DNA of 64,000 bases from Bugula neritina (taxonomy: Eukaryota > Animalia > Bryozoa). Both the position numbers and the translations under genes were made by a program. Numbering within the stretch: the stretch's first letter is position 1; every line of letters begins with the position of its first letter. The notes beneath the pieces were generated by a model that was not told the origin of the DNA, ran no database searches, and saw only the letters and a program-made list of their open reading frames with translations. The stretch is taken from assembly GCA_964035545.1 (NCBI GenBank), contig OZ037766.1, positions 30,230,274 to 30,294,273 on the forward strand, in the 5' to 3' direction. Shown here piece by piece: positions 4,990-53,683 of this stretch.

Positions 4990-5450
4990 TTGTTTTGTCT
5001 AAAGAGCCTAAACATTTCACCAATTTTTGAACTATTTTTAACTCAATCTAGTAGCAAAGCTCACAAACATAACAATTACATTATTCTGCCATTTTTTAAA
5101 ATTACCTCTGCTTACCAGATTGTATCTTTAGAACTTACACAGAGAGATTGAAAAACAAAAAGCTGCTCTGCTTTTCTGAAAATACAAATACTACTGCTAT
5201 ACTAAATACAAATGCCATCAAAATTCCAATTCTTATCTTGAGTTTTTTTTCTAGAAAATATTTATTTTATTAGAAAACCGGAGATTAATTTTTGAGTTTA
5301 GTAAATCCATAAATAAATAAAAGTTACAAAAATAATGGTCATTTAGAAAAGACCTTACATAAAACTGTTGATTTTACAGTTTTGCTACTTTCAGTGAACT
5401 AATGTAATTTCTTTGTTCATAATTGTCTGTTTTTACGCATTAAATACTTA
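4990..5450 (-). pseudogene. Family copy A: 5' half only (promoter, exon 1, signal-peptide exon 5236-5139)
   Basis: The reverse complement aligns with copy C at 14420-14880 (exon 1, intron 1 atggatttactaaactcaaaa, intron 2 aatgtaattgttatgtttgtga). The start codon is ATA instead of ATG (ctcaag ATA aga att). The coding stretch is 98 nt rather than 97. The gtaagt donor is retained. No Cys/Arg exon was found downstream. Confidence 0.8.
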
Positions 5451-6565
5451 AATGAAATACACTCATGGTATTTAATCCTAATTTTAATTGGTTTAGTTAG
5501 ATTAAGTTTAACCTATGGCTATATGTCAGGTGGGTAAGTTTTATTGATTCCATAAAAAGTGACGGAGTCAACAAACTAGTAATGATTAGATGTTGCAGCT
5601 TAAAGTACTACTTTGATAAGCGTAGCTATTCCGTCTTTAATGATGGCAAATTGGCAGTTTTTTGAGTTTGTTTTAATATTTCATGCCAGTGGAGCGCTGT
5701 ATGTCACCTCAATTATGTTCTTGTTTAAACTAAACAAAGATTTATGCTCTGCATTCTAAAATGGCCCAGATGTGAAAATTGAAGCACTAAGTTCTGCAGC
5801 AAATGTAAAAGAATTGTAGTGAAAATAAAGAGCATGATGACTTTATCAATTCTTTCATTTAATCTAAAATATTAAATTTTCATTTCTAAGCAGAAATCAT
5901 CAATGTATTTTTTGTTTTGTATTTATCATTTGGCCTTCAATTAATAAAAAGCCTTTTAGTCTATGCAAGTTACAAGTAGATTTCTAAAACATGTTTGACT
6001 TTGTTGTCTTAATTACTATACAGCATGTTTTTTCCCTGTTTTTATTTTTGCAGAATTTTTTCCTCTTTAAATGTTTACAGCAACAACTAGAATAGAAAAG
6101 TTGTCCAGTAACTCATATTGTTAAAGCTTTCAACCTACACAGTATCTCAAAGCCACTCCTTGATAATTTAAGCTACGTTTACACTTTGTTAAATTTTTTT
6201 ATTTATAAAAGTGACAGTTTAGTTATTAGCATTAAGATACATTCATTATACTAAAGATTAAATAATACCCTCCATGAGGTGTTCATACCATGGGAAGCTT
6301 ATTTTTTTATCTGTAATAAATCAAAACATTAAGTTATAGGAAGTATTATTTATAGCTCTGTTAACCCACAGATTTTTTAAAATATGGAAGACTCGACTCT
6401 AAAAAGTGTCTGGAGGGCTGCAAGATGTTAACAAAATAATAGTCTTATACAATCTCTAATTGGTAAAGTTATTTTGTAACAGAAGAATCACAATAGCTTC
6501 AGATATTATAGCATAACGTTATCTATCATGTCCTCAACATTTTCGATTTAGGTCGCTGCAAGTCA

Positions 6566-7527
6566 TGTCATGTCATTAGCTGTCCTTCGTGTCCGAAGAT
6601 GACTTCCGGTGAATCATGGGCTTCCATTTACATCTGTCTTTGCTGAGAGATTGCCAGCTACCAATAGGGATCTTCAGGTCTTTTAGATTGCGTTTAACGG
6701 TATCTTTGAATCTCAGTCGCGGCCTGCCAACACCACGGGTGCCTTCTTTCAGTTGTGAATAGAGAATTTGCTTAGGTAATCTAGAATTATCTATTCGATG
6801 CACATGACCAGCCCATCTCAGGTTTTTTTAATGAGTAGTTCATACATGCTGGGTAGATTTGCCTGTGCTAGAGTCTCCTCATTCGAGATGAAATCCCACC
6901 ACTTCACGTTCAAGATCTGGCGTATATGTCTCATCATATAGGTGTTGAGTTTGTGAGCGGCTATCCTGTATACAGGCCAGGCCTCCGCTCCATAGAGCAG
7001 AGAGGACAGGACAATATGGCTCTGTACACTGTACACTTGGTCTTGAATGACAGATCTTTATTGTACCACACTTTGGTCTTTAGTCTGCCAAATGAGATTA
7101 AAGCATTGGACATCCTTGTATGAATCTCTTCATCCATCTTGTTGTTGCACATCACTGTAGACCCAAGATATTTAAACTTATTGACGTTGGCAAGGTCTAC
7201 ATTATCTATGCAGATACTGTCACCACTGTCATGGCCTCCAGGTGCCGGTTGGTAGAGCGTTTCCGTTTTCTTGATATTGATCTTCAGACCAAAAGCTTTG
7301 GAAGCTCTGGCGAATCTGTCGACTAATTCCTGTGCATCGTCATGGCTGTGTGCAACGAAGGCAGTGTCGTCAGCAAACATGAGTTCTCTAACCAATACTT
7401 TCTGTGTTCTTGTTGTTGACTTGTATTGGTTCACATTGAACAGATCAGCTCCAGGTCTACTTTGAATCCAGACGCCTTTATCACAGTTTTCAAATGCGTG
7501 CTGTAGAACAGCCGATAAGAAAATACT
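6566..7527 (-). mobile_element. 5'-truncated RTE-clade (BovB-like) LINE with frameshifts
   Basis: RT motifs ELMFADD, FGLKINIKKT, FKYLGS, LLYGAEAW and RLPKQILY..GRPRLRFKDTV. The 3' tail is (GACAT)n. An 11-bp target-site duplication gctgcaagtca lies at 6555-6565 and 7528-7538. Confidence 0.92.
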
Positions 7528-9190
7528 GCTGCAAGTCAACACAAACGTTTTTATATATGTATTGTAGCTTTTGATTTTTTCTTTGAAAAACTATTTAAGA
7601 TAAACTGAAATTAAAACATGTCATATAACATAATAGTTTTATTTTAACTGGTTTAAGTAATAACTTTTGTTTATAATCTTTATTAAATCTGCAGAACCCA
7701 ATTTATATCTGATAACATATGAAAGGAGGTGGTTAGGCAATATATAACACTTACTGTCAATAACACGTGCCATCATTCTGTTTAATCACATATTAAAGGA
7801 ATCTGATCTTTTTTCTGTCATAATGAAGTATTCCTTTCAACCATTTCAAGTCAACAGCAAATTGCAAATATTGTATTATAATTATGGCAAAAGCAAATTA
7901 CAATTTTTGTTGAAAGTTTCATCCTAATCAATCTTATAGTATAAAAATGACACAAAAATCATAGTAAAGCTGTGTTAGCTAAAGTCTTTGATAACACAAT
8001 AATTTATTTAGGTAACCTTTCTATTTTGACAGTTGGTGAATTAGCCTAAAATGTTAGCAAAATAATATAAACAATGAAAACATAATACGTGGTAACTAAA
8101 ACACACTATTGTGAACATAGCACTTGTGAAGAAATACATAAGCAGCAATTTGTTCTCCAGTTCTCAGCATATTGAAATATTTTTGCTGACACATGAAGAG
8201 TTTGTAAGTATGTTCACCAATAATTCAAATATGACAACTTGAAACATCCTATTTATAGTGACAGATGAAAAAGCTAGTCTTAATTTAAGCTCAATTTAAT
8301 AGAGATCAGAAAAAGAAGAGTTGAAGGTGCACAGATTGAAGTGCATATGCATGAATGTATATTTGCACACGTATAATTATCAATGTTTGTGTTATCCTGT
8401 GTTATCAGTAAAGATCTGCTCTCTCTAAAACTTAAATCCAAACTTGTTTTATTATGTACAAATTAGATAACTTTTCTGTATAAAGCATCCAAATAGCTGC
8501 CGTTTAAATGATTTACCATTATAAGTTCATTCTCATTCATTCTTATATAAATATAAATAGATGAGTAATAGTTATACATTCTGTTCCCCACTGATCCAGA
8601 TTTATTAGCTCCCTTCATTATGTAACAAAAATTGGCGGAGAAGCAAAATGGTAAATAACGTTTAGCGAGGGTGAACTTGTTGAAATGAAAAAGTCATATT
8701 TTATATTAGGTACAATTACAAGTTCTATTTTTACTGACATACTTTAGTTTTCCATGACCGCATGTACAACATGAAAAGACAAAATACTTAATTCAAAAGT
8801 TTGGTAGATTGCTGGTGAATCTTTATATATAATTTTACTTGTAGCATATTGTACAAATTTATATTTGACCAGTTGTGTATAAATAGCAATTTTTTCTGAA
8901 GCAAACGAAGACTCAAAATAAAAATTTGTTGGATTTTTTATGGGGGAAGAGAGGATACTATATGTGCACATATATAAATGGTACAGGATGATTCAAAAAT
9001 ATGTTTGATATATTTGAAAACAGTCCACTACCATTTCTTTCTAAATTATCAGGTGCTTTTTTTTAAAGATATAAATTAGTGAAATTGTGCAGTAACCAAA
9101 GTTCAAACGGATGTGTCGTGTGATTCTATAAACGGTTCGATTTTCATGTTATCAGTACAACAATAAAAAACCGTATAGGCACAAATATAT

Positions 9191-9892
<702 letters not shown>

Positions 9893-11793
9893 TTTGCTAA
9901 CATTCACCCTTAGTTAAAATTGAAAGGTTATCTATAAATATATTTTGTCATCAAAAACTTTAGCTATTACAGCTGGACTATAATTTTTGCGTTAACTTTT
10001 TCCAAGATTGATTAAGATGAAACTTTCAACAGCAATTTTAGTTTGCTTTTGCCAGATCGAATTATAATTAAATATCTGCTATTTCCTTTTGACTTGAAAT
10101 ATATGGGTCATTTTACTTAATTTAGTGCATATTCTAAATATCTTCAGTTTTTAGCTAATTTTCACAACTTATAGCTGCTAATTTATACAGATGCTTGCGC
10201 AAAAACAATACAATATTACTAAATACAACTATAAAATAATCAAGGTCTTTTCACTTTTTGCCTAATCTCTTTTGTTTTTTTTTGTAATTATTTACCTAAT
10301 TTGATTTGCGGACTATCATGGTTTATTCGTGACAATCCGTAAATTCAAATTAAGTAACTAAAAGATTTGGGAAATCAAGCGAAATTAAAAAATCTTTGAT
10401 TATTTAGTTGCATTTGTTGATATTTTATTAGTTTTGGACAAGAACCCATATACATTAACAGCTAAGTTCTAAAAAAATAGCCTAAAACTGAAAAATTTGA
10501 TTGTGTACTTCATTAAGTAAAATGACACGTATGAAAGGAATAATTCATTATGAGGGAGAAAAGATTAGACTCCTTCAATGTGTGATTAACTATAAGATTA
10601 GTGGCACGTGTTTTTGACAGTAAGTGTTATATATTGCCCAACTACCTCTTTCCACGATATGTTATCGGAAATAAATTGAGTTCTTGATTAAATAAAGATT
10701 ATAAACAGAAGTTTTTTAATGATTAAATCAGTTAAAATTAAACTATTATGTTATGTGACATGTTTTAGTCTCAGTTTATCTTAAATAATTTTTCAAATAA
10801 AATCGAAAGCTATATAGCCTACACATATAAAACGTATGGGTTATCTTGTAGTGACCTAATTCAAAGGTTTTGAAGAATTAATAGATAGCATTACGTTATA
10901 AGATCTGAAACCATTGTGATTCTGTTGTTTCCAAGTGCCTTTACTACTTAGATTATATTGCGTAAGGCTATTATATATAATTGTGCACCAACTGTTGTAC
11001 AGATAAAGTTTTACATCATAGATTGATTTCCTGCATGTGAACTAGAGTCTACTTTGTTTCTCATTTATACCTTTGTACAATAGCACCTTCTATCATGGAG
11101 CTAAGTCTTTAAGATTTAATTTTACTTTTCCTTACAGCAATTTATATGCCTTAATTTTCAACATGAAGTAAACTCTGGTATAGCGCAGCACTGTATTGTA
11201 AGCATTCCAGGGGGTTTTAAATAACATAAATGCTATTTAGGCTGTTCAAAGTTCAAAACTGCATTAAAGAACATTATAAATATACTTGCATATGGCCATT
11301 AGCGCATTGTATTGTTTACTATTTACTTATATTTTCATTTTGCTAAAAGTATCATATGTAATGTATATCACATAAGTCATGATCATTCAATAGTTTTTGT
11401 TTTAAGTATTTCCGAATAGAGATTATTAAATTATTTTGTAAGTAGAACAATTATAGAAAACTTTTATGATTCTATATTAAAACTTTGTTTTGTTGCAGCT
11501 ATATTTAGCAGTTTACTCTCCACTTGTGGTTGCATATATCCCAATAACTATAAAACTGCAATCTCTATACACTTTACAGGTACTTTCATATATAACTTAT
11601 TTTATCTATCACGAAGAAGTAATTTTCTATATCAAAATAATAATAAGTTCCAGCAACTAATCTGATATGCACTTCTTATGGAATCAATAAATCAGATTCA
11701 CTCAAATTTGTCACTTTTTTTTAAATTATTCTCACTTAAACATTTAAAGTTAAGATGAAGGATTTGCGAGTTTAATTACTTTGAGTATCCAGG

Positions 11794-11830
11794 TATAAAA
11801 AGGCCTGATTATAAAAACAGAAACTAGTTT
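11794..11830 (+). promoter_or_regulatory. TATA box and probable initiator of family copy B
   Basis: TATAAAA at 11794-11800, about 30 nt upstream of an Inr-like tagttt. The arrangement is conserved in copy E (30948-30918, minus strand). Confidence 0.6.
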
Positions 11831-11988
11831 ATTGAAAGCGGCAAAGGCACAACATCAAAAATTTTGAGGTGAAGAATGCTTTTCTTGATAACTAGTATAT
11901 TTGTAGTTTTCATATTCAAAAATTATTAAATATAACAAACTTGATCTCTACTTTTATATACTTATAAATTTATTTGTAGAAACTGAAG

Positions 11989-12784
11989 ATGAGAATTTGG
12001 ATGTTGATAGCATTTGTAATGAGTGTAGCAGTTGTATTTGTCTCTTCACAAAACCAAGCAGACTTTTCCTCTGCAGTATCTCTGTGTAAGTAGCTTAACT
12101 ATTTATAATCATATGCTACTTTGGTAAAATTTGTTATTAGATCGCCGTAAAGTGATAGTCAAGCGATTGGTCAAACTTCTAACTTTTTTTTAAGCAAAAG
12201 AAATTAGAAAACAAAATTATCTGAATGTTTTAATTGAAGCTATTTGCTTTGATTTTTCTAGCATTAGCAAATTTTTTTGCTGTTTTGTATTTATTGGCTT
12301 CTTAAAAAAAATATATTCAAAATTATGATTACTAATAAAAATAATATAGTAAACTAAATTTTGATATCTATGATGGAACTGCATTTAGAGGCCAAAAGTT
12401 AATTATATACTTCACATCATTTCTATGACCAAAGTTCGATTTTTCTTTTCAGCATGCCAAGCCTGTCCACGCACTCGTACTCAAGCATGTCTTCAGCGCT
12501 TAGGAGGAGGTAGGGGAGGTAGAGGAGGTAGAGGTGGGAGGAGAGGAAATAGAAGCGGGGGCAGAAGAGGTAAAAGAAGAGAGGGCAGATCTGGAAGGAG
12601 AAGTAGCCAAAGACAACAAAGGAAAGATGGAAGAAGAGCTTATAGAGGAAGAGGTCTTGTGAACAAAGCTCAAATCTGCAATGCAGAAGCAGGAATACTC
12701 TCTAGAATTAAGTCTTCAACAACATTTTCTAAAAATATGTGGGTTAGTAGAGTTATAAATAATACTTCTTACTTAATGTTTTGA
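11989..12784 (+). CDS. Family copy B: secreted Cys/Arg-Gly-rich protein, tail-deleted, 142 aa; coding exons 11989-12085 and 12453-12784 (non-coding exon 1 about 11825-11868)
   Basis: MRIWMLIAFVMSVAVVFVSSQNQADFSSAVSL, then a phase-1 GTAAGT..TTCAG intron, then SCQACPRTRTQACLQRLGGGRGGRGG...NKAQICNAEAGILS. After about 12704 it reads into sequence homologous to 17361 onward. Confidence 0.8.
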
Positions 12785-13439
12785 TTTATTACAGATTAAA
12801 ATGTATAATCTTTATGGTATAAAAATCTCATGAAAGGTATTATTTCATTCTTACAAAAATTAATGTATCTTTGCTAATAATTAAGCTGTCATTTTTATAG
12901 ATATAGAAATTTAATCAAGGTAGCTAAAAATATATCAAAGAGTGGCTTTGGGATACTATGAGGGTTGAAGCTCTGACAATATGAGTTACTGCGGACAACT
13001 TTTCTATTCTAATTGTTGCTGTATACATTTGAAAACGGAAAAATTTTACAAAAATAAAAACAGGGCAATAACATGCCGTGTACTAATTGAGACAACAAAG
13101 TAATTTATGTTTTAGAAATCTACTTTATATATAACTTGTATATACTAAGAGGGTTTTTATTAATTAAAGATTATATGATAAACTATATCAACAAAAAATC
13201 TATCTATCATTTCTCCTTGGAGGTAAAACTTTATTTTTTTCAGATCAAATGAAACAATTAATAATAGTTATCATGCCCTTTTGTAGATCATTTTTACTAC
13301 AATTCCTATATCAATACAGAACTACATATATAAGTACTTCAATTTTTAGATCTGGGTTACTTTAGAATTCAGAAGATAAGACCTTGTCCATTTAAAACAA
13401 AAACATAATTAAGATGACTGACAGTTTTTCGCTGACATA

Positions 13440-14010
13440 GTAAATCAAAAAAACCTAAAAAATTGCCAATTCACCAATGGATGATGCCGGTGAAACCTTG
13501 AAGTCCACTACATATAGACCATGCTATAAATCTCATGATGGGAACCAATTGGTTGGTACTTGTGGATGCATATACCAAATATCCTTGCATTCATCCCACA
13601 AGTTCTATGTCAACCAAGGCAAAAACAGACTCACTGGGGATAAACTTCACTCATTTTGGATGCCCGCAATACCATAGTCACTGACATTAGACCAAGCTTT
13701 ACATCTGAGGAGTTTAAACATTGTGCAAAGACAGAGGAAATAGATACACCTGAGAAGAGCATATTATTACTATCCTGCTACCAATGGAGCAGCAGAATGA
13801 CTATAGTAGAATCTTTCAAGCAACCACTAACGAACTTTGCACCATTATCTAGAGAAGCCCTGAAGGAATTCTAGATGCAATACAGGAAAAGACCCTATTG
13901 TCTAATGAATTCTCACCGAGCTAAACACATTGTGAACGTCAGATCCGAACGAAACTAGATGCATTACTAACATCACCAGCCCATCTTGATTAAAGAAAAC
14001 AAATGCAAGA
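13440..14010 (+). mobile_element. Decayed Gypsy-type integrase fragment
   Basis: Interrupted translation LHIDHA..WLVLVDAYTKYP...IVTD...FTSEEF...YYPATNGAAE..VESFKQ, which follows the retrotransposon DDE integrase core. Confidence 0.75.
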
Positions 14011-14630: not shown

Positions 14631-15822
14631 ATGAGAGTTTGGATTCTGATAGCATTGATACTGAGCGCAGCAGTAGTGTTGATCTCTTCACAAAACGAAG
14701 CAGGTTTTCCCTCTGGAGTCTCTCTTCGTAAGTTCTTAAGATACACTCCTTCAGACAGAGGTAGTTATATATAGCTCCAAAAACTGGCACAGTAATGTAA
14801 TTGTTATGTTTGTGAACTTTGCTCCTAGATTGCAGTAAAAAAGTTTTTACAATTGGTAAAATATTTAGCTCAATAGACAAATCAAGTTAAAATTAAATTA
14901 TCGTAGTAACTTTACTGATCAGTTATTTATTTTTAATTTTTGCATGACCTCAATTTTTTTTATTTTTTTTTATTTATTAGTTTATTAGTAGAAAACTAGT
15001 TGAAATTACAGCTATTGATAAAATAAATCACTGAATTTTAATACTTATCAGGAAATTATATTTGCATCTTCTCAGAGTATGTATTGAAAAACTACTTTCT
15101 ATTTCAAAAGTTATTCACAAGTCTTAATTTCTATGACATGCGTTTCATTTATTATTTTAGCTTGCCAGGCCTGTTTACGTACTCGTACTCAAGCATGTTT
15201 TCAGCGTTAAGGAGGTGGTAGGGGTGGTAGAGGTCGTAGGGGTGACAGAGGTGTCAGGAGAGGAAATAGAAGAGGGGGCAGGAAAGGTAGAAGAGGGGGT
15301 AGAAAAGGAGAAAGAAGAGGTAGAAGAGGGAGCAGAAGTGATAGAAGAAGAAGTAGCAGGAAAGAAGGAAGGAGAAGTAGAAAAGAGGAAAGGAGAAGTC
15401 TAAAGATCCAAGCTCAGTTCTGCAATGTAGAAGCAGCAACACTTTGTACTAGTCTTTGTCAGCCACCAATTCAAGCACCCACCTTAGCACCAATCACTTC
15501 AGCACCAATCACTTCAGCACCAAACACACCACCACCAATTATGCTACCTTTAATTACACCACCACCAATTACACCAGCTCCTATTACACCAGCACCAATT
15601 GCAGCTGCACCAACCACTGCTGTAATAACCAAACCAACGTTAACCACTGCTGCACCAACTGCAGCTGCTCTAATCCCTTCAGCGTTGTTCATACCAGCAG
15701 TAGTTGTACTACCACCAACCACAACTGTACCAACAACCACAACTGTACGAACAACCACAACTGTACCAACAACCACAACTGTACTAACAACTACGGTAAA
15801 CCCAATGTACCAAGGTAAATGA
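14631..15822 (+). pseudogene. Family copy C: full-length reading frame with one in-frame TAA at 15208-15210; exons 14631-14727 and 15161-15822
   Basis: MRVWILIALILSAAVVLISSQNEAGFPSGVSL-P-CQACLRTRTQACFQR*GGGRGG...QFCNVEAATLCTSLCQPP...PTTTT...MYQGK*. The paralogs have TTA or CTA (Leu) at the TAA position. No frameshift. Confidence 0.82.
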
Positions 15823-18515: not shown

Positions 18516-20311
18516 AAAAACTTTTATATTATAATTGAAAACCAATTGCTAACATGGATTGTGATGTGGGAATATCGAAAATTGCAATATTTTTTTATCT
18601 AAAACAATTGTGAATTTTGTGTCTAGCGCTTAAGGGGGTAAAATTGAGTTTTAATATAACAGTGCTTGCCTGTATACAAGACATATTTTTCACAGTGCTA
18701 ACATAAAAGGTTTTATGAAATGTTAGTTGAAGAAACTCTGAGAATTTTTAAATTTTTATTGAGTCAATAAATTAAATAAATGTCATCAATTGTAGATTTG
18801 ATGAAAGTATTAAGTCTATTTTTAAAGATTTGCCTTATCCACATATTAAAACTCATATGTTAAAAATAATAGTTATTTCAACACTATTTTCAAAATCATC
18901 ACAATGACTTCAGGTTTTACATGCAAAGCTCTTTGAGTAAGCATATATAGCTACATATTAATGTATATACATGTCACTAATTTTTTAGATTGCAATCCTA
19001 TATTGACTTGTACCTGTGATTATTCAAATGTCACCTGTGAAGTTGTTGTATATTCATACCAGTTGTAACATTTTAAGCTTGACCACAGGTTTTTTAACAT
19101 AGTTAACCATAATCTTTGTAAAGAAAACTCTACAGGTAACATTTGAATAATCACAAATACAAGTCAAATCTAGGATTTCAATCTAAAAACTCAGTAATTC
19201 GTATACTTTATTATGTAGCTATGGTTACTCAAAAAATGCGCGCACACACACACACACACATAACACACACATAACACACACATAACACACACAGACACAA
19301 CACAGACATAACACAGACATATTATATCTGTCATATATATAAGTGATCAATAAAATGTATGGCAACTGTTGCTGTCTATACATAATTAAAATAAATGCAT
19401 AATCCTCGTTAATACTGAAACCCCATGCCGAATGCAAGTTTAAACCCTTTGGTGCTTATAGTTGGTTTAGAAGCAACTGATAATAGACATAATAGGGAAG
19501 TTAGTAGCAGCTGCCCTTAACTGCTTTGTTTAAGATAGTAAGCTTCTAGCATTCCTACAGATTTCCATTATTCTCCTAATACTATCATCAGCAACTACAA
19601 ACAGTGTAGCAGTTCGTGGATGTTAGGAGATTCCTTGGCATGATGTCATATGATTTACATACCATATAACAATGAGCTGCTATGCAGAGCTTTCTGGTAT
19701 GAGTTAGGAGAAGACAACTCCTGGGAGTAAAATTATATCTATGCTTCTAATAAAGTTGATGAAAGTGTTTTTGCTTGTGATTTCGTGCTTTGTTTGACAT
19801 TTACAATCATGCTAGTACACGTATGTTTAATAAGAAGGAGCATTGAGGTTTACTAAGATTTTCTTTTGTTATTCAAATTAGTTAAATGTGTTAAGATATT
19901 TTCAATTATGTGGTACCACTGTTATTGTCTTAAAACTCAAAAAAATCTTTTAGTTTTAGTTTGTGTTGTGAAAGCAAGGACATGAAACGACTGAAAAAAA
20001 GAAAATAGAGCAAAAATTTTCCGATCACAGCGACTGTACACAGATTAAGACATAATGCTCTCACTTTATGGTCAGTAATTGAGTTCTCTATAACCATTCA
20101 AGTCACAGCTAGCATTTTTTAAGGCTCGTGACTCTTAGATAAACTCCTAGAGTCACTTGAGCTCTCTGGTTTAAGCTTACACACCGTTTAAATATGCTTT
20201 AGTAAAACTACAATTTTTTATACTATAACTATTGCGAAGGTGTGGGCCATGGTACTCTGTTCTGTGCTGAGGAAGGGACAAATCCCAAAAACAGCTGCTG
20301 TACACAGATTG

Positions 20312-20343
20312 ACACACACACGCGCGCGCGCACACACGCGCGC

Positions 20344-20404
<61 letters not shown>

Positions 20405-20438
20405 CACACACACATGTAGAGTAGAGTAGAGTAGAGTA
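20312..20438. repeat. (CA)/(CG)/(GCAC)n and (GTAGA)n microsatellites
   Basis: Directly visible. Confidence 0.9.
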
Positions 20439-20765: not shown

Positions 20766-21382
20766 ATTGTCAAGACTGCTTACGTACTCGTAGTCAAGCA
20801 TGTCTTCGCCGTCTAGAAAATAGTAGGAGAGGTAAAAGTAGTAGAAAAGCCAGAAGAAAAGGCAGAAAAAGTATAAAAAAAGGAAGTAGAAGTAGTAGAA
20901 AGAAAGGGGGCAAATCTGCAAGGAGAAATAGCAGAAGACAACAAAAGAGAGATAACAGAAGAGCTAGAAGAAGAGGTCTTGGGAACAGAGCTCAACTCTG
21001 CAATGTAGCAGCAGGACAGCTCTGTGTTACTTTTTGCCAGCCGCCAACCTCAGCTACTACACCATTTCCAATTACTCCAGCACCAATCACCCCAGCACCA
21101 TTCACACCACCCCCATTTATACTACCTGTCATTACACCAGCACTCATTACACCAGCTCCTATTACACCAGCTCCAGTCACTGCTGCACCACCAACTCCCG
21201 CACCAACTTTCACAACAACCTCTGCACTAACCCCAGCACCAACCCCTTCACCAACCCCCGCACCAACCCAAGCCCCAACTCCAGCACCAACCACCACAAC
21301 AACCACCACAACAACCACCACAACAACCACCACAACAACCCCCACAACAACCGCTGCACCTGGTCCAAAGGGAAAAAGATGA
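20766..21382 (+). CDS. Family copy D: intact terminal exon (Cys frame, Arg/Lys loop, Pro/Thr tail); own signal exon not found
   Basis: Acceptor ttttctttcag, phase 1. CQDCLRTRSQACLRRLENSRRGKSSRKARRK...AQLCNVAAGQLCVTFCQPP...TTTTT...PGPKGKR* with no stops. Confidence 0.8.
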
Positions 21383-26789: not shown

Positions 26790-27465
26790 AGAGTAGAGTA
26801 GAATAGAGAAGAGAAGGGTAGAGTAGAGTAGAGCAGGGCAGGGCAGGGCAGGGCAGGGCAGGGCAGGGCAGGGCAGGGCAGGGCAGGGCAGGGCAGGGCA
26901 GGGCAGGGCAGGGCAGGGCAGGGCAGGGCAGGGCAGGGCAGGGCAGGGCAGGGCAGGGCAGGGCAGGGCAGGGCAGGGCAGGGCAGGGCAGGGCAGGGCA
27001 GGGCAGGGCAGGGCAGGGCAGGGCAGGGCAGGGCACGGCAGGGCACGGCAGGGCAGGGCAGGGCAGGGCAGGGCAGGGCACGGCAGGGCAGAGCAGGGAA
27101 GGGCAGGGCAGGGCAGGGCAGGGCAGGGCAGGGCAGGGAGGGGCAGGGCGGGGCAGGGCGGGGCAGGGCGGGGCAGGGCGGGGCAGGGCGGGGCAGGGCG
27201 GGGCAGGGCGGGGCAGGGCGGGGCAGGGCGGGGCAGGGCGGGGCAGGGCGGGGCAGGGCGGGGCAGGGCAGGGCAGGGCAGGGCAGGGCAGAGCAGAGCA
27301 GAGCAGAGCAGAGCAGAGCAGAGTAGAGTGGAGTAGAGCAGAGTAGAGTAGAGTGGGGTAGAGTAGGGTAAGGTAGAGTAGAGTGGGGTAGGGTAGACTA
27401 GGGTAGGGTAGAGTAGGGTAGGGTAAAATAGGGAAGAGTAGAATAGGGTACGGTAGAGTAGGGTA
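26790..27465 (+). repeat. Compound pentanucleotide array (GAGTA)/(GGGCA)/(GGGCAGGGCG)/(GGGTA)
   Basis: Directly visible. The left junction acttcatatagagtagagtagaatagagaagagaaggg closely matches the reverse complement of about 48700-48737. Confidence 0.95.
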
Positions 27466-29625: not shown

Positions 29626-30749
29626 TTATTTTGTAAAGGGTGTTGTTGTAGTGGGTGTTGTTGTTGTAGTGGGTGTTGTTGTTGTAGTGGGTGTTGTTGT
29701 TGTAGTGGGTGTTGTTGTTGTAGTGGGTGTTGTTGTTGTAGTGGGTGTTGTTGTTGTAGTTGGTGTTGTTGTTGTAGTGGGTGTTGTTGTTGTAGTGGGT
29801 GTTGTTGTTGTAGTGGTTGTTGTTGTAGTGGGTGCTGGTGCGAAGATGATTGCGCCAGGGAATCGTGCGGCGATGGCTTGTGTAGTAGTAGTTGGCGCAG
29901 CAGTGGTTGGTGCAGCAGTAATTGGTGGTGGTGTAATTGGTGCTGGTCTAATAGGTGCTTGTGTAATAAGTAGTATCATAATTGGTGCTGGTGTAATTGG
30001 CGCTGCACGAATTGGAGCTGGTGTGATTGGTGGTTGTGTAGGTGCTGGGGCTGGTGGCTGACAAAAGCTAGTACAGAGTTGCTGGGCTTCTATATTGCAA
30101 ATTCGAGCTGATCTGTTTCTAAGATTTCTTTCTCCATTTCTTCTGCCACCCCTTCCTCTTCCCTTCCTCCCACTTCTCTTTCCATCTTTACCCCCTTTTC
30201 TTTTACTTCTCTTGCCCCCTTTTCTTTTACTTCTCTTGCCCCCTTTTTTATTGCCTCTCTTGCTCTTGCCCGCTCTTCTATTGCCTCTCCTGTCTCCTCT
30301 TTTATTTTTTCTCTTTTTCCCTTTACCACCCCTGCCTCCTCTACCTACTCCTAAGCGCTGAAGGCATGCTTGAGTACGAGAACGTAAACAAGCTTGGCAT
30401 GCTGAAATAACAAATCAAAATTTAGTTTGCTATATTTTTATCAACAGTATACAAAATAGCAGACATATTTCCTAATGCTAGAAAAGTCAAAACAATTAGC
30501 TTCAATTAAGACATTCAGATAATTCTTTTTTCCAATTTCTTTTGTCTGAAAAAGTTTAAAAATTTGCCCAATCACTTGACTATCACTTTACTGCAATCTA
30601 ATAACAAAATTTACAAAAATAACATATAATCATAAAGAATTAAATTACTTACACAGAGATACTGCAGAGGAAAAATCTGCTTGGTTTTGTGAAGAGACAA
30701 ACACCACTGCTACACTCAATACAAATACTATCAAGATCCAAGTTCTCAT
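29626..30749 (-). CDS. Family copy E: complete intact gene, 290-aa secreted Cys-framed polycationic protein with mucin-like tail; coding exons 30749-30653 and 30401-29626 (non-coding exon 1 about 30918-30875)
   Basis: MRTWILIVFVLSVAVVFVSSQNQADFSSAVSL-S-CQACLRSRTQACLQRLGVGRGGRGGKGKKRKNK...GKRSKRKGGKRSKRKGG...RNRSARICNIEAQQLCTSFCQPPAPAP...(PTTTTT)n..PFTK*. Canonical phase-1 intron. 873 nt with no internal stop. Confidence 0.9.
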
Positions 30750-30914: not shown

Positions 30915-30948
30915 ACTAATTTTTGTTTTCATAATCAGGCTTTTTATA
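30915..30948 (-). promoter_or_regulatory. TATA box and probable initiator of copy E
   Basis: TATAAAA at 30948-30942 in a context nearly identical to 11794-11830. Confidence 0.6.
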
Positions 30949-45981: not shown

Positions 45982-46075
45982 TGATGCATTGGCTTCGTGG
46001 TAAACCGCGTTTCCTTTGCACTCGTTGGGTATGGGTTCAATCCTCGCAGTCAGCTAAATTTTTTGCAATCTTGCA
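45982..46075 (+). mobile_element. tRNA-derived SINE-like head
   Basis: Pol III box A TGGCTTCGTGG (45990-46000) and box B GGTTCAATCC (46034-46043), followed by a T-run. No convincing acceptor stem. Confidence 0.6.
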
Positions 46076-48249
46076 TTCTTGTCAAATACTTCCACTAAAT
46101 TATTTTTACTAATTTTACACATTGATATGTGTAATAATAGTGATGGGTCAAATATGACTATAGTTGTAGAATTTCTTTCACTTTTTAAATAACACTCAAC
46201 AGGTGGACAGTGTATATAGTACATACATATTAGTTAGATACTGAACACTGGGCTAAATATAGGGTTTAGTTATTAAGTAAATATTGATAGTTGGTGCAAT
46301 AATGGAGAAATTAAGTTATGTACATGTTCTTGTGATTACATTTTTATTAACCGCACCCCACGCTAAAATTTGTTATCCAGATGAAGAAGGTTAAGCTATC
46401 AAAGCTTTTAAATTACTGCACAGAAGTGTAAAAATAGCAGCCTATTTCTTCTTGTTATATAGTGAAATGACATTCATTATGTATATAGGCATATATATAT
46501 ATAATTTAATTCTGTTACATCATATTTTAGCTTTAAAACAAGCATGTTATGTCCATTTGTTTATCACACCCCTGCAGTAAATATGTCAAAAATTCCTTAC
46601 TTTTGCTACCTAAAATTTCTTTTAAAATATAAGCAGCTACATAGAGCATTTTTTCAAGTTAGAAAATATGTATATATATTTTTCAACTACGTTTTAAAAG
46701 GAATACAAATATGTAAACCACAAAGCAGTGATTGTCTTCTTTCAATGCCATATTTTTGATGACACCAAGAAAGAAGGTGATAATGCAACTCCTAAGAGCA
46801 TGTGCACTAAATCGCTCCTCTGTCTGAGAGTATACCATTTGTATTAATGTATGAAGTCTTCAACATATATTTCAACTTATTTTTGCAAGTAACTCATGAC
46901 AGTAAACTATATGCTTGCTTTTCTTCATGTGTGTGTGCGTGTGTGAGTGTGTGTGTAAAAATGCAGCACTCATAATAGTTGCTATTTTATGAACAGCTTA
47001 CTATAGCTACAGTTATATGTAATTGCATAGGAGTGTTGCAAGTGTTTGCTAAAAGATGGTATATAAAACATGTCGACGAATTTGTTGTAGAAAAATTTAA
47101 ATAATTACTTAGCATTTAGCAATAAAATTGTTCATGTACAAATCAGAAACACCAAGTTGTATGCATATATTTCAAATAGTATATGCATGAATTTGCAAAA
47201 AAAATTAGAACTTATACTTTCACTATGAGTATATGTTTTATATATGTGCTCATTTTGTATATACTGCACAATATGTTATTTACAATGTTAAACCAAAATA
47301 ATCAGAACTCAATATAGTGTAATACAGGCACATCTACAATGTTAACAAATATAACATTAAAAACAAGAAACAAAATTGTTGGTATCTTTTACTTAATTTT
47401 TTACAAGCAAAAAATTATTCTTGCCGCAAACTAAATTTAAATGCTGAGGTTCGTAAAGTTATATGTTTGTTAAATTATTTTGCATTTGTTTATATTCTAC
47501 AAATAATTTCTACATCTTTTATATAATTGCGATATTTCTTTTCGTCTACTACATGCAGCTCATTATATGCATATGTAGGCTATATACAATGCAGCATAAA
47601 ATTTTATAATACTAAGCAAAAAATGCTATGAAAATAAAAACATTTTACAAAATGATATTATATTATGGTAGCAATAAAGTTGTAATAGACTATTATTTAA
47701 TGAGAAGACAATTATGTCTTTATAATGAAGATTGATAAATTTATAATATGAGCTGAAATTGAGTGAGAAGACAATTATGCTTTCAAAATACTTACAAGAC
47801 TAAATTCTTATCTAATAGCTACAGTATTTAATATCCTTTGTTCAGAACAAAGTCTAAAAGGAGCGGATTTAAATAAAAATTCAGACCTGCATTTGTTAAA
47901 ACTTTTCAATCAAAATTATTACATTATATTATTCTTTCTCATAACTCCTAGCTTCTAAAACCTTTTGCATGAAAAAATTGATTTAGAATGCAAATTACTG
48001 CTAGAAATTGCCGTGTTTTAATGTCAACCCTAACTGTATCCACCACTTGTTTTAGTTGTTACGATCGTTGCCTAACCAATGAAGTTGAACTGGTTGTACC
48101 TCCAGCCAATCAATTACTTATTTCAATTGCGCCTCATTAGGCTAGGATCGTTGACGAAATCTATATAATGTAATACAAATCCCATTACCACTGATTGACC
48201 CGAAGTTCTCTACGACTTTTATAGTGGTATAGGATAATAGATATACTGG

Positions 48250-48737
48250 CCCTGCCGTGCCCTGCCCTGCCCTGCCCTGCCCTGCCCTGCCCTGCCCTGC
48301 CCTGCCCTGCCCTGCCGTGCCCTGCCCTGCCCTGCCCTGCCCTGCCCTGCCCTGCCCTGCCCTGCCCTGCCCTGCCCTGCCCTGCCCTGCCCTGCCCTGC
48401 CCTGCCCTGCCCTGCCCTGCCCTGCCCTGCCCTGCCCTGCCCTGCCCTGCCCTGCCCTGCCCTGCCCTGCCCTGCCCTGCCCTGCCCTGCCCTGCCCTGC
48501 CCTACTCTACTCTACCCTACCCTACCCTACTTTACTCTACTCTACTCTACTCTACTCTACCCTACTCTACTCTACCCTACTCTACCCTACTCTACTCTAC
48601 CCTACTCTACTCTACTCTACTCTTCTCTACCCTACTCTACCCTACTCTACTCTACTCTACTCTACTCTACTCTACTCTACCCTACCCTTCTCTTCTCTAC
48701 CCTTCTCTTCTCTATTCTACTTTATTCTATATGAAGT
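48250..48737 (+). repeat. (CCCTG)n/(CTACT)n compound array
   Basis: Directly visible; inverted counterpart of 26780-27100. Confidence 0.95.
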
Positions 48738-49290
48738 GAATTAATATATAGTAGACTTGCACAGTATAAAATCTTAACATATTTTGTATGCTTCTCTGTT
48801 AGGATATCGAGTTGGAGTACGTACATTAGTGTTATTATAATGGCTGAAATATATTGTTGGATACATTATACCATCTTTTCCAGGATACCATGAAATAGGG
48901 GTAGGGGTTAATGATTCATTGAAAAATTTTATATTTCAATAAAGTGACTGCATGTTGAGAACGGCTCAGCAGATAAATTTTTTTTTATTATAGGCAGGTC
49001 CAAAAAACATCTTGAACACGTTTTTTTTTCTGGTTAAATTTAATTAGGGTCAGAAGACATGCTGTTTTACACTAAAATGTAGAATATCTGCATGATGACG
49101 CATTTACATTAATTCTGCGCAGCTACACACATATAATTGTGATTGCTTTATATAGGTTGCATGCCCCTCTCCTCATATGTTAAACTTATTAGCAGAGCAA
49201 ATGATATTCTAAGGCTTGTCAAAAAACATAATATTTCTAAAAGCAAAGCCCAATTTTGTCATTTAAAACTTTTAAATAGTCAAAATTTAC

Positions 49291-50020
49291 GAGTGGAGTG
49301 GAGTGGAGTGGAGTGGAGTGGAGTGGAGTGGAGTGGAGTGGAGTGGAGTGGAGTGGAGTGGAGTGGAGTGGAGTGGAGTGGAGTGGAGTGGAGTGGAGTG
49401 GAGTGGAGTGGAGTGGAGTGGAGTGGAGTGGAGTGGAGTGGAGTGGAGTGGAGTGGAGTGGAGTGGAGTGGAGTGGAGTGGAGTGGAGTGGAGTGGAGTG
49501 GAGTGGAGTGGAGTGGAGTGGAGTGGAGTGGAGTGGAGTGGAGTGGAGTGGAGTGGAGTGGAGTGGGGTGGGGTGGGGTGGGGTGGAGTGGAGTGGAGTG
49601 GAGTGGAGTAGAGTAGAGTGGAGTAGAGTAGAGTAGAGTAGCTAGCTGTAGAGTAGAGCAGAGTAGGGTAGGGTAAGGTAGAGCAGAGTAGAGTAGAGTA
49701 GAGTAGAGTAGAGTGGGGTAGGGTAGAGTAGGGTAGGGTAGAGTAGGGTAGGGTAGAGAGGAGTAGAGTAGGGAAGAGTAGAGTAGAGTAGAGTGGGGTA
49801 GGGTAGAGTAGGGTAGGGTAGGGTAGGGTAAGGTAGGGTAGGGTAGAGTAGGGTAGGGTTGGGTAGGGTAGGGTAGGGTTGGGTAGGGTAGGGTAGGGTT
49901 GGGTAGGGTAGGGTAGGGTTGGGTAGGGTAGGGTAGGGTAGGGTAGGGTAGGGTGGGGTAGGGTAGGGTAGGGTGGAATAGGGAAGAGTAGGGTAGGGTA
50001 GAGTAGAGTGGGGTAGAGTG
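49291..50020 (+). repeat. (GAGTG)n/(GAGTA)n/(GGGTA)n compound array
   Basis: Directly visible. Confidence 0.95.
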
Positions 50021-51109
50021 TAACTTAAGGTAATAAATAACAATTATTCTAATCATGTTATATATTAAAGTTTTATGGCTATGACTGAGAAAATTTGTGC
50101 TGTGAGGCCCTACACCTAATAGTTTTTTATTCTATAGGCTGTTTTGTAATTAGACTATAAGTTATTTTAACTATATATAAAGCACTACTATATATCCTAA
50201 TACTACAACACCACCTGTAAAGTTTTTTCTTGCACCAGACTGGGCTTGAGTACTGCACTTCACCTGGGCTAGGGTTTGTGCCCGTTCCACCACTGTTTTT
50301 GATTACTAACTCACTTTCAAAGCTAGCTTAACTCAGCTGTGTAGCTAGCTACTGTTAGCTATTATAACTATTTATAGTTATTTATTATAGCAAGCAAGTA
50401 GATGAAAATTAGTAATTAGTATCTTACTATGAACAGAACCACAAAGTATTTTGTATACCATCATGTTATTCTATACTCAAGTTCTGTTTTTGTTGTTGAT
50501 AATATCTTATAGTGTTGTAGTTTCAATGAGTAATGATACAATTTCTTGTGTAATGTTTTGTAATGCTATCAGTCCATCATTTATTATATAATAGTTAACA
50601 TTGCTTTATAGGTGTCATGGTTGTTTGGTTGGTAACGGTTGATAACTGTTGGTAATGGTTGGTTGGTTATATAAGAAATGTTGGTCTGTTGTATAATAAC
50701 AGTAAAGATGAAATTAAAACCGTGAAGTTGCGTTTTTACCTTTGATGAAAGGTATAAAGGTATAAAGGTATAAAGGCAACTTGAGTCTCTTGGGCCTAGT
50801 AATTCACTCAACTGGAAGACTGTGAAGTGAAAACTTCACACCACCTATGCATAGACATTATAAATGCTCAGAATAATTTGGATTCTTTTAATCTCGGATT
50901 AGCCAGTTGACAATAAGTATTATATATTGTCTAAGATCTACGTATTTAAATATATTATTTTATGGCATTTAATAAATATTACCAACCTAATTATAACGGT
51001 TTAGCAAGTAAATCCAATAAAATAAAACCACGCATTTTCAGCTTTAGTTTATCTGAAATAATTTTAGTTGAAAACATCAGCTATGCATTCATAAAAAAAT
51101 TTAAACAAA

Positions 51110-51755
51110 TTTAGAAATAGTAAAGGGGGTGTATCAGGAATAGGAGAAGTAGCAGAAGGCAACATAGGGGAGATAGCATAAGAGCTAGAAGAAGAGGTCT
51201 TGGGACCACAACTCAAATCTGCAATATATGAGCAGGAAAACTTTGTGCTATCTTTTGTCAGCCACCAACCTCAGCACCAAAACCATTTTCAATCACCCCA
51301 GCATCAATCACTGCAGCACCCTTCACATCACCGCCATTTATGCTACCTTTCATTACAATAGCACCCATTACACTAGCAACAATTACATCAGCTCCCGCTT
51401 ACACCAGCCCCTACAGCACCAGCTCTAGTTACGGCTGCACCAAAAACTGCTGCAACAGCAACTGCTGAACCAACTCTAGCACCGACTTCCACAGCAGCCC
51501 TAACACCAAACCCTCACACCATTTCCTCCACCAACTCCCCCCACCAACTCCCCTAACCTCCTCTCCCTATATAATAACCCCTGCACCAACCCCTGCACCA
51601 ACCCCTGCACCAACCCCTGCACCAACCCCTGCACCAACCCCTGCACCAACCTCTGTACCAGCCCCTGCACCAACCCCTACATCAACTTAGCACCAACTTC
51701 TGCACTAACTCAGCACGAACTCAACACCTGGTTCAAAAGAAAAAAGAAAATAAAT
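51110..51755 (+). pseudogene. Family copy F: decayed terminal exon most similar to copy D
   Basis: agagctagaagaagaggtcttggga is identical to copy D. Translation RARRRGLGTTTQICNI* has TGA at 51229-51231, followed by a frameshifted ccaacccctgca tail. The 3' flank 51755-52338 aligns with 21383-21852. The first Cys block is missing. Confidence 0.85.
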
Positions 51756-53683
51756 AAAAAATGCATTTGAAAGCGTGGCATCTGTGCGGTGGGCTGTATT
51801 AAATTTCTTCGATCAGTTGGTTGTTTTCATATTATGCAAATTAACATGTTATTTTATAAAACTATAATTATTTAGAAAGTTTTAATGTCAATACTAAATT
51901 TGCAGTTTTAGCTATGAAATAAGTTTTATTCGTCAATTGAAATCATTAGCTAAATTATGTAACTTTTTTACTACGCGCTTTAGAGGAATGCGCACGAGTA
52001 TAACGTCATCATTTGTTATAAACATTTCTAACTTAAATGGTCATTTCAAAAATTAAAAAATTTCACCAAAAAATTATACTCTAATATAGTACCCAGCTAC
52101 AATTAATTTCTACTCTAATATAGTGTCCAGCCACCATTAGTTTACACTCTAATATAGTGTTCATCCACATTTATTCTGCATGCATTTGTTACTCAGTCCC
52201 AAAGCTTTTAGAAGTAAGTTCTATATTCTTAAATTGCTGCTATATTTTGTTTGGAGCTGCAAGAAGATGGATTATAATGAGTTTGTGTCATAGTATGACT
52301 GTATTGATAGAGCACTATAAATAGCAGCTAACAACCAAGTTAAACCAGAAATAAGTAAACAATGTAGTGGATTCTGGCCACTTATGTTGTCAACCTCCTG
52401 GCATAGTTTACAATCTCACATTCTCTGTATATACGCTAGCTGCTATAAGTGGATACTGAAATAAAAGGGCTAAGTATTATGAGTACCATAATAAGCAATT
52501 GACTGAAAGCAAAACAATTGTGCATTTGCTAGTTTTTCTTTCTTGTTATATAAAAAGCATTTTATACTTGAAATTTGCACTGCTTAGCTTTAATTTTTGT
52601 TCTAATTGAAAACTTATTTCTGTTTTTAAAGATTTTTAAAGAAAATTCATCACCAATACTTATCTAGTTGAAAAAACTGTAAAAAGAAGAACTTTCAGTT
52701 ACAAGATTAAAAATGTCTTTCTTTTAGTTGATTAATAAACTGTTTGAATATAAGTTTATTGCACAGTTTTTCTAATAGGCTTATGAGCTTACACAAACTA
52801 GACTTACATCTTGGTGAGGGTTGATGACTGCTGGCAAATCAAATAAATATGATTGATTCAGCTGCACTTATAGAAGAATTCAGCTGAAGATTAGTTAAAG
52901 ACTCCAGCTTAAGATCAGCTAAATATCAGCCTACCACAGATTTAAACACTTTATCTTGATTTAGGTGACGAGAAATGTAGAGTTTTAATCCAAGACTTAT
53001 GGTTTATGTTCATTTGTGAACTAAAATGCGTCTGCTATAACGTGCCTCTGGCAACGCAAGGTTTCACTGTAGAATTTTAGCTTTTTGCCTACTTTACTTA
53101 TCTAATCAAAAACATTAACATATGACTAGACGAAAGAGGGCGCACAGATTGTGTTCACAGAGAGAAATATTAGTGCAGCGGGTGCACTAATATTGTTCCC
53201 AGCGCCTTTTATTGCTTTTATAGTCTGCACCACACCTATAATAGTTGCTAGACCTGCACTTATTTTGATGGTAATAGACATTTGTCAGATTAGTATAAGC
53301 TGAACAATATTTAGTTGTAGCTCTGAAACCACTTAGTTATTCTGTCAATGCTACTTTTAACAATTATTATGTAATCATCATCACTAGATCTGAATGAAGC
53401 TAAACAGTGGTTGGCGGAGCAAAAAGTGAGATCAATGCTACAACTAAATATGTTCAAGCAAAACTTTATTTACATAAGAATCATGGAACCATTGGCAGTT
53501 GTTCACCTAACAACATTATCCGTTCACATGTGCACTGATGATGACCACAAAGCTTAAAAAGAAGCTATGATAGAGTGAACACCCTAGTTGAACGCTATAT
53601 TTGGGTAATTTTAAATAGTGCTTCCCAGTTAGATGCTATTTATATATTTTCATGCAATTTATATATATATATATATATATATA

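What the first reader, a model, noticed from the sequence alone, without database searches (positions are those of the whole stretch)
4990..52340. Locally expanded family of six secreted 'Cys frame / polycationic loop / mucin tail' genes, invisible to the ORF track
Seen: six related loci (A about 5.2 kb minus, B 12.0 kb plus, C 14.6 kb plus, D 20.8 kb plus, E 30.7 kb minus, F 51.1 kb plus). The full structure, seen in B, C and E, is a non-coding exon 1, a 97-nt signal-peptide exon, a phase-1 intron and a large terminal exon, with a clear TATA box in B and E. The Cys blocks are conserved while the basic loop and Pro/Thr tail vary greatly in length and sequence. I do not recognise the protein family. 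Established: tandem expansion with rapid pseudogenisation is typical of secreted defence, adhesive, mucus and gamete-recognition proteins. Inference: this is a lineage-specific secreted effector system under birth-and-death evolution.
Basis: partly seen in the sequence, partly recalled or inferred. Interest (0 to 1): 0.88.

Follow-up and report, generated by a model that had tools for sequence, protein, structure and literature searches.

The report
Bryozoan hairpin proteins with cationic loop
A moss animal (very probably Bugula neritina) carries, at one chromosomal spot only, an undescribed family of secreted proteins in which a small disulfide-stapled helical hairpin has a hugely expanded, strongly positive loop and a sugar-bearing tail; most copies are dead, and expression and function remain untested.

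Summary
All six loci exist where stated and belong to one protein-coding family. Each has a 97-nt signal-peptide exon, a phase-1 GT-AG intron and a terminal exon. That exon encodes C-x2-C-x7-C, a 65-88-residue Arg/Lys/Gly loop (net +28 to +39), C-x7-C-x3-C and a Pro/Thr tail.

Only E is fully intact in the window. A is a signal-exon relic, B is truncated, C has one premature TAA, D lacks its signal exon, and F is a 5'-truncated relic.

The window is the third of three recent tandem copies (93-99% identical at DNA level) of an older array. The family, about 19 loci with 5 intact, lies only at C2:30.117-30.282 Mb.

Old paralogs show purifying selection on the Cys blocks (dN/dS 0.12-0.39). The loop reading frame favours Arg over Glu.

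No homolog turned up in Pfam, PDB or two multi-billion-protein libraries. Three compact cationic peptide genes 5-14 kb beyond the window share the same Cys frame and exon layout. The scan had already noted two of them (s1-475783, s1-476064). The long-loop family is probably their derivative.

AlphaFold predicts a helical hairpin with a disordered loop. No RNA evidence could be obtained, so function (surface defence or adhesive/mucus) is inference.

The parts
5139..5236 (-). Locus A: relic of the signal-peptide exon. The start codon is ATA and the exon is 98 nt with a GTAAGT donor. The rest of the gene is lost at a (CA)n tract near 4920.
   Evidence: same defect in its sister copy at C2:30160568
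11794..11800 (+). Locus B: TATAAAA box, conserved with E
11989..12085 (+). Locus B: open 97-nt signal-peptide exon with a phase-1 GTAAGT donor
12453..12784 (+). Locus B: terminal exon. It is truncated after the fourth Cys, so it has no C5/C6 and no Pro/Thr tail. Probable pseudogene.
   Evidence: sister copy B1 carries stops
14631..14727 (+). Locus C: open 97-nt signal-peptide exon, phase 1
15161..15822 (+). Locus C: terminal exon with one premature TAA at 15208-15210 and otherwise an open frame. The sister copy C1 (L037:9010-9651) has no stop.
20766..21382 (+). Locus D: open terminal exon (204 aa) without a signal exon. Homology to the complete copy D2 stops 182 nt upstream, inside the intron.
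30942..30948 (-). Locus E: TATAAAA box. A putative non-coding exon 1 (about 30915-30875) follows; it is unverified.
30653..30749 (-). Locus E: 97-nt signal-peptide exon (Met-Arg, a 15-residue hydrophobic core, and Val-Ser-Ser before the likely cleavage site), phase-1 donor
30402..30652 (-). Locus E: 251-nt GT-AG intron
29626..30401 (-). Locus E: open terminal exon of 257 codons plus stop. Cys block 1 is 30364-30399, the polycationic loop 30100-30363, Cys block 2 30061-30099 and the Pro/Thr tail 29629-30060. This is the only complete gene of the family in the window.
51120..51745 (+). Locus F: 5'-truncated relic of a terminal exon, with an in-frame TGA in Cys block 2 and a decayed tail
   Evidence: the same truncation occurs in the two sister copies
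26833..27321 (.). (GCAGG)n satellite at the left edge of the inverted block that carries E
48249..48528 (.). (GCCCT)n satellite, the reverse complement of the array at 26.8 kb, at the right edge of the inverted block

Best explanation
The loci are copies of a taxon-restricted gene family for secreted glycoprotein-like molecules.

Shown:
- The layout is a signal-peptide exon, a phase-1 intron and one large exon.
- The large exon encodes two short Cys-bearing segments (C-x2-C-x7-C and C-x7-C-x3-C), a 65-88-residue loop of net charge +28 to +39 between them, and a Cys-free tail that is 49-69% Pro+Thr.
- The family exists only at C2:30.117-30.282 Mb. It consists of an old array of about eight diverged types that was recently copied three times in tandem.
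- Five genes are intact and the rest are decaying.

Predicted: the two Cys segments are antiparallel helices and the loop is disordered.

Inferred:
- Three disulfides staple the helices, in the order C1-C6, C2-C5 and C3-C4, so the polycation is displayed as a closed loop at the hairpin tip.
- The tail is O-glycosylated and acts as an extended hydrated stalk.
- The loop arose by in-frame expansion of a purine-rich tract inside the 9-10-residue turn of the compact cationic hairpin peptides encoded just beyond the window.
- The molecule works by bulk electrostatic binding of polyanions. The most likely targets are microbial surfaces, which would make it a mucus- or cuticle-associated defence factor related to antimicrobial-like neighbours. 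A role in cross-linking acidic polysaccharides in mucus or larval adhesive is the close second.
For: - Loci and gene structure.
- Family confined to one locus.
- Three tandem units, 93-99% identical in the aligned blocks, in one gap-free stretch.
- Selection between old paralogs. dN/dS is 0.12-0.39 for the Cys blocks, 0.22-0.52 for the signal peptide, 0.39-0.88 for the loop and 0.37-0.46 for the tail, at dS 0.4-1.4. Signal-exon identity is 77-79% against 48-63% for intron 2.
- Every loop and tail length difference among the open E, D and C copies shown is in frame.
- The loop DNA is 76-83% purine, yet Arg codons AGR far outnumber the equally purine Glu codons GAR: 22:1 in E, 27:4 in C1 and 20:1 in D2. 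The translated frame is therefore under selection for positive charge.
- AlphaFold gives helices at residues 2-16 and 83-113 with block pLDDT 79-88, and a loop below 50.
- The compact neighbours fold as a helical hairpin with pLDDT 84.
- The exact Cys-frame pattern occurs in 214 kb only in family members and in three compact genes 5-14 kb past the window. All three have a signal exon ending in phase 1, and two begin Met-Arg-Thr like E.
- hhalign of the second Cys block gives P = 6e-4.
Against: - There is no RNA evidence at all.
- Block-wise HMMs of the long-loop family do not retrieve the compact genes. The link therefore rests on Cys spacing, exon plan, adjacency and one weak profile alignment.
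- Disulfide pairing and O-glycosylation are not tested.
- Recent copies have dN/dS of 0.4-1.5 on few changes, which fits relaxed constraint.
- Each loop contains 1-3 R-x-K/R-R sites and 14-17 dibasic pairs, so it may be cut out rather than displayed.
- Nothing discriminates between defence and adhesive or mucus roles.
Confidence: 0.6

Rival explanations
1. The proteins are structural or adhesive. They would be glue- or mucus-type proteins in which the polycationic loop condenses acidic polysaccharides by a coacervate-like mechanism and the Pro/Thr tail provides a glycosylated matrix. Possible sites of use are larval attachment, cuticle or surface mucus.
For: - The tail is 49-69% Pro+Thr and includes about eleven copies of an 18-nt Thr5-Pro unit.
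- The charge of +28 to +39 is conserved without sequence conservation.
- The layout of a short signal exon, a phase-1 intron and a large repetitive exon, with copy-number turnover, recalls Drosophila Sgs glue genes. That comparison is from my own knowledge and was not tested here.
Against: - The tail has no Cys and no polymerising domain was found.
- The nearest relatives are small cationic peptides, not matrix proteins.
- There are no expression data placing the genes in adhesive glands.
Confidence: 0.25
2. The protein is a pro-protein. Furin-type convertases would cut the loop at its many basic sites, leaving a two-chain, disulfide-linked hairpin on a mucin stalk and/or releasing small cationic fragments. 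The loop would then be a connecting or packaging peptide, not the active part.
For: - Every type keeps 1-3 R-x-K/R-R sites and 14-17 dibasic pairs in the loop.
- The loop is predicted to be disordered and exposed.
- The flanking cysteines could hold two chains together.
Against: - Basic sites are an unavoidable by-product of Arg/Lys richness.
- The strong frame-specific excess of Arg over Glu suggests that the charge itself is selected.
- No processing data exist.
Confidence: 0.2
3. The whole family is non-functional. It would be recently duplicated decaying DNA whose open frames survive only because the duplications are young.
For: - About 14 of 19 loci are visibly broken.
- dN/dS between the recent copies is 0.4-1.5.
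- No RNA evidence is available.
Against: - Old paralog types C, D and E are at dS 0.4-1.4, yet each keeps a complete open gene, canonical splice sites, all six Cys and dN/dS well below 1 on the Cys blocks.
- Indels in slippage-prone tracts are all in frame.
Confidence: 0.08

Closest known systems
Compact cationic 6-Cys peptide genes 5-14 kb beyond the window (L045:3786-4893 +, L045:7079-6831 -, L046:4206-4514 +). Two were noted earlier by this scan (s1-475783, s1-476064); none is published.
   Same: The Cys frame C-x2-C-x7-C ... C-x7-C-x3-C is identical. They have a signal-peptide exon ending in phase 1 and a terminal exon that starts 1-3 codons before the first Cys. They are cationic, have variable C-terminal tails (one with a Thr/Pro linker right after the last Cys) and lie in the same chromosomal neighbourhood.
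   Different: Their loop is 9-10 residues, against 65-88 here. Their tails are short basic, Pro-Arg or Arg-Gly-rich rather than long Pro/Thr. Sequence similarity outside the Cys residues is marginal.
Plant alpha-hairpinins (for example vicilin-buried peptides and nigellin; PDB 6o3q, 2nb2)
   Same: They are small secreted helix-turn-helix hairpins stapled by disulfides, often cationic and antimicrobial. They were among the stand-alone matches to the compact model (Z 5.4, rmsd 1.8-2.6 over 37-41 residues).
   Different: They have four Cys in C-x3-C ... C-x3-C, not six in the frame seen here. They come from plants and have no expanded loop or mucin tail. The Z score is within the noise for helical hairpins, so this is an analogy of fold, not membership.
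Mucin-domain glycoproteins and Drosophila Sgs salivary glue proteins
   Same: They are secreted, have Pro/Thr-rich repetitive domains of variable length and evolve fast with copy-number turnover. The Sgs comparison (short signal exon plus a phase-1 intron) is from my own knowledge.
   Different: No VWD, C8, TIL or cystine-knot domains or any other Pfam domain were found. There is no sequence relation. The hairpin with a polycationic loop has no counterpart in those proteins.
Two-chain disulfide-linked peptides made by excising a connecting peptide (the insulin superfamily; sea-urchin centrocins)
   Same: Two Cys-bearing segments are separated by a basic-site-rich connecting region.
   Different: The Cys patterns do not match insulin's (B chain C-x11-C, A chain CC-x3-C-x8-C; from my own knowledge). 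Cleavage is unproven, and the loop is far longer and more highly charged.

Membership tests
Bryozoan compact 6-Cys cationic hairpin peptides (neighbouring genes) | Cys frame C-x2-C-x7-C-(loop)-C-x7-C-x3-C | tested here: met
   A regular-expression scan of six-frame translations of 214 kb hit only 7 long-loop copies and the 3 compact genes.
Bryozoan compact 6-Cys cationic hairpin peptides (neighbouring genes) | Signal-peptide exon ending in phase 1, and a terminal exon starting just before the first Cys | tested here: met
   The signal exon is 97 nt here and 88, 91 and 115 nt in the compact genes. All are phase 1 with GTAAGT donors.
Bryozoan compact 6-Cys cationic hairpin peptides (neighbouring genes) | Short (9-10 residue) hairpin turn | tested here: not met
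   The loop is 65-88 residues. I therefore treat this as a derived subfamily.
Bryozoan compact 6-Cys cationic hairpin peptides (neighbouring genes) | Detectable sequence similarity beyond the cysteines | tested here: inconclusive
   hhalign gives P = 6e-4 over the second block only. Block HMMs do not retrieve the compact genes.
Alpha-hairpinins | Helix-loop-helix fold | tested here: met
   AlphaFold predicts helices 2-15 and 20-40 in the compact core (pLDDT 84) and helices 2-16 and 83-113 in E. These are predictions only.
Alpha-hairpinins | Four-Cys motif C-x3-C ... C-x3-C | tested here: not met
   Six Cys with spacings 2, 7 / 7, 3.
Gel-forming or classical mucins | Pro/Thr/Ser-rich domain | tested here: met
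   The tail is 105-148 aa, with P 0.19-0.29 and T 0.25-0.48.
Gel-forming or classical mucins | VWD/C8/TIL/CK or SEA domains | tested here: not met
   No Pfam family at E <= 1, and no Cys in the tail.
Gel-forming or classical mucins | Dense O-glycosylation | not testable with these tools
   Needs glycoproteomics.
Any curated protein family (Pfam-A) or solved structure | Significant profile match | tested here: not met
   Pfam gave nothing. PDB sequence search gave nothing better than E = 2. Foldseek against PDB gave none. The ESM Atlas gave none.

The most novel reading that the evidence does not exclude
These would be a previously unknown class of animal surface molecule. A disulfide-stapled helical hairpin presents a +30 to +40 disordered polycation as a closed loop on top of a glycosylated stalk. 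It would have evolved from antimicrobial-type hairpin peptides by in-frame expansion of a purine tract. The colony or larva would use it to control bacterial colonisation (possibly including the bryostatin-producing symbiont of Bugula neritina) or to condense acidic polysaccharides during attachment.
Probability: 0.25. Interest if true: 0.7.

Novelty: new variant of a known kind. Interest (0 to 1): 0.5.

Why it matters
This is a clean, datable example of how a small defence-type peptide fold can acquire a new module. A hairpin turn has been inflated about eight-fold by slippage of a purine-rich tract, while selection keeps the reading frame that spells Arg and Lys rather than Glu.

If the proteins are expressed, they are candidates for two roles in a major fouling organism that also hosts a pharmaceutically important symbiont: surface defence with control of the microbiome, or bio-adhesion.

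The locus also documents a three-fold segmental duplication, plus an inversion bounded by inverted pentanucleotide satellites, within one gap-free assembly stretch. This makes it useful for studying birth-and-death dynamics.

Tried and rejected
- **Homolog searches, all blank.** E terminal exon residues 1-125 against 5.8 billion clusters. A profile of six cores against 1.84 billion representatives gave one hit, which was a repetitive junk translation. A profile of the compact genes. The ESM Atlas by features and by shape. Pfam. PDB by sequence and by Foldseek.
- **VIA-align.** It gave only generic helical hairpins at Z <= 6.2.
- **More flanking DNA.** I could not check whether the 18-gene cationic peptide array 559 kb downstream (s1-475709) has the same Cys frame.
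- **Literature searches.** Searches on Bugula neritina with mucin/secreted, antimicrobial peptide, cysteine-rich/signal peptide, and settlement/adhesion found nothing describing this family.
- **Rejected from memory, by Cys spacing only.** ShK domain, crustacean hyperglycaemic hormone, saposin, attractin and insulin-like peptides.
- **Rejected: haplotig artefact.** All three units lie in one stretch without N gaps and differ by rearrangements.
- **Joined protein not built.** The exons were searched separately by reference.
Full report
**Source and context**

The window is AT-rich eukaryotic DNA. It lies at G000:C2:30230274-30294273 in a 216,009,554-base assembly. Earlier notes of this scan call the genome a bryozoan. 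The size and nine large chromosomes match the published Bugula neritina assembly (216.00 Mb, 9 pseudomolecules; PMC11480708). I treat that identity as very probable.

**The observation**

All six loci exist.

E is a complete gene on the minus strand:
- TATAAAA at 30948-30942.
- A 97-nt exon at 30749-30653. It encodes Met-Arg, a 15-residue hydrophobic core and a small-residue cleavage motif.
- A GTAAGT donor in phase 1 and a 251-nt intron.
- A 257-codon terminal exon at 30401-29626.

The terminal exon reads C-x2-C-x7-C, an 88-residue Arg/Lys/Gly loop, C-x7-C-x3-C, and then a 144-residue Pro/Thr tail. The tail ends in about eleven 18-nt units encoding Thr5-Pro.

B and C have the same exon plan. 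However, B stops after the fourth Cys and C carries a TAA at 15208-15210. A is only a signal-exon relic whose start codon is ATA. F is a 5'-truncated terminal-exon relic with an in-frame stop.

D has an open terminal exon but no signal exon. Its similarity to the complete copy D2 ends 182 nt upstream of the exon, inside the intron. So only E is intact in the window.

**Extent of the family**

A protein search and a profile search of the whole genome place every recognisable copy in C2:30.117-30.282 Mb. I fetched 214 kb around the window and catalogued the following:
- 12 signal exons.
- 15 terminal-exon loci.
- Two further decayed copies of an eighth type.

Self-comparison shows three tandem segmental units of about 57-76 kb, whose aligned blocks are 93-99% identical. 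Each carries the same ordered set of diverged types, D-E-F-G-(H)-A-B-C. There are no N gaps between the units, so a haplotig scaffolding artefact is unlikely.

The window holds the end of unit 2 (A, B, C) and unit 3 (D, E, F). E is inverted within a block at window 27.2-48.25 kb. That block is bounded by (GCAGG)n at 26833-27321 and its reverse complement (GCCCT)n at 48249-48528.

The defects of A, B and F are shared by sister units, so they predate the triplication. The loss of the signal exon in D is shared only with D1 in unit 2; the unit-1 copy D2 is complete. C's stop is newer still, because its sister copy C1 is open. Complete models are D2, E2, C1, E1 and E.

**Is it coding and constrained?**

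Between the old types (C, D, E; dS 0.4-1.4):

| Feature | Result |
|---|---|
| Signal exon identity | 77-79% |
| Intron 2 identity | 48-63% |
| dN/dS, Cys blocks | 0.12-0.39 |
| dN/dS, signal peptide | 0.22-0.52 |
| dN/dS, loop | 0.39-0.88 |
| dN/dS, tail | 0.37-0.46 |

- All splice sites are canonical and the intron phase is kept.
- Length differences among the open copies shown are all in frame.
- The loop DNA is 76-83% purine. Yet in the translated frame Arg codons (AGR) outnumber Glu codons (GAR) of the same base composition by 22:1 in E, 27:4 in C1 and 20:1 in D2. This gives net charges of +28 to +39.
- A neutral purine tract would not hold one frame, so positive charge itself appears to be selected.
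- I found no sign of positive selection.
- Recent copies differ by too few changes to judge (dN/dS 0.4-1.5).

**Relatives**

There is no match outside this genome:
- Pfam.
- 5.8 billion clustered proteins.
- A profile search of 1.84 billion representatives, whose single hit was a repetitive artefact.
- PDB sequences.
- The ESM Atlas.

These libraries probably hold few or no bryozoan proteins, and a motif of about 25 residues cannot reach significance in them. 'Lineage-specific' therefore remains provisional.

Within the fetched DNA, the exact Cys frame occurs only in family members and in three compact genes 5-14 kb beyond the window's end. Each compact gene has:
- A signal exon of 88, 91 or 115 nt ending in phase 1; two of them begin Met-Arg-Thr like E.
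- A terminal exon starting 1-3 codons before the first Cys.
- A 9-10-residue basic turn.
- A different tail: short basic, Pro-Arg repeats, or a Thr/Pro linker plus an Arg-Gly-rich end.

Profile-profile alignment links the second Cys block at P = 6e-4. Block-wise HMMs do not retrieve the compact genes. I judge common ancestry probable (about 0.75) but not proven. Two of these genes were already noted by the scan (s1-475783, s1-476064). The link to the long-loop family is new here.

**Structure**

AlphaFold on six aligned cores gives helices at residues 2-16 and 83-113 (block pLDDT 79-88) and a loop below 50. The compact core gives a helix-turn-helix hairpin with mean pLDDT 84.

The spacings (3 and 8 residues in helix 1; 8 and 4 in helix 2) fit a ladder of three disulfides between antiparallel helices. 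I could not inspect the coordinates, so the pairing is inference.

Fold searches return only generic helical hairpins. The stand-alone peptide matches are plant alpha-hairpinins at Z 5.4, within the noise. That is an analogy, not membership, because the Cys motif differs.

**Mechanism**

The best-supported reading is a secreted, probably O-glycosylated stalk carrying a stapled hairpin, whose tip has been expanded into a flexible polycation. Charge is conserved but sequence is not, which points to bulk electrostatic binding of polyanions.

The nearest relatives look like antimicrobial peptides, so I favour a role at the animal's surface against microbes. An adhesive or mucus cross-linking role is nearly as likely. 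The many basic cleavage motifs allow a pro-protein reading. No data here discriminate between these.

**Limits**

Exons were searched separately by reference, and the joined step is left out.

**Verdict**

This is a real, undescribed, single-locus family with a distinctive architecture and a plausible origin from neighbouring compact peptides. Function and expression are open.

Noticed in passing
L045:3786-4893 (+), L045:7985-6831 (-), L046:3604-4514 (+), i.e. 4.7-14 kb beyond the window's end: Three compact secreted cationic peptide genes have the same six-Cys frame and the same signal-exon/phase-1 layout as the family studied, but a 9-10-residue loop. Their tails differ: short basic, Pro-Arg repeats ending Gly-Lys, or a Thr/Pro linker plus C-x3-C and an Arg-Gly-rich end.
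   Followed up: partly
window 26833-27321 and 48249-48528: Inverted pentanucleotide satellite arrays, (GCAGG)n and its complement (GCCCT)n, sit at the two edges of the 21-kb block that is inverted relative to the sister duplication unit. This suggests that the inversion arose by recombination between them.
   Followed up: partly
window 53975-59026 (+): A BEL/Pao-type LTR retrotransposon remnant. It has a 1269-aa open frame with Pao peptidase, integrase zinc-binding domain and DUF5641 matches, and no reverse transcriptase domain was detected.
   Followed up: partly
window 6961-7542 (-): A reverse-transcriptase (RVT_1) fragment of a non-LTR-type element lies between loci A and B.
   Followed up: no
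G000:C3:13.02-13.12 Mb: The Thr5-Pro tail of E matches, at 92-100% identity, many places inside a single open frame reported as 19,701 aa long. This is presumably a giant Thr-rich mucin gene.
   Followed up: no
L043:5512-5790 and L036:163-480 (C2:30225512 and 30150163): An eighth, decayed family type ('H'), about 3 kb downstream of type G in two units, has a recognisable first and second Cys block in different frames.
   Followed up: partly
window 4459-4947, 9144-9903, 20300-20420: Long (TG)n/(CA)n and (CGCA)n microsatellites abut the truncation points of loci A and D. Simple repeats may mark the breakpoints of the rearrangements.
   Followed up: no
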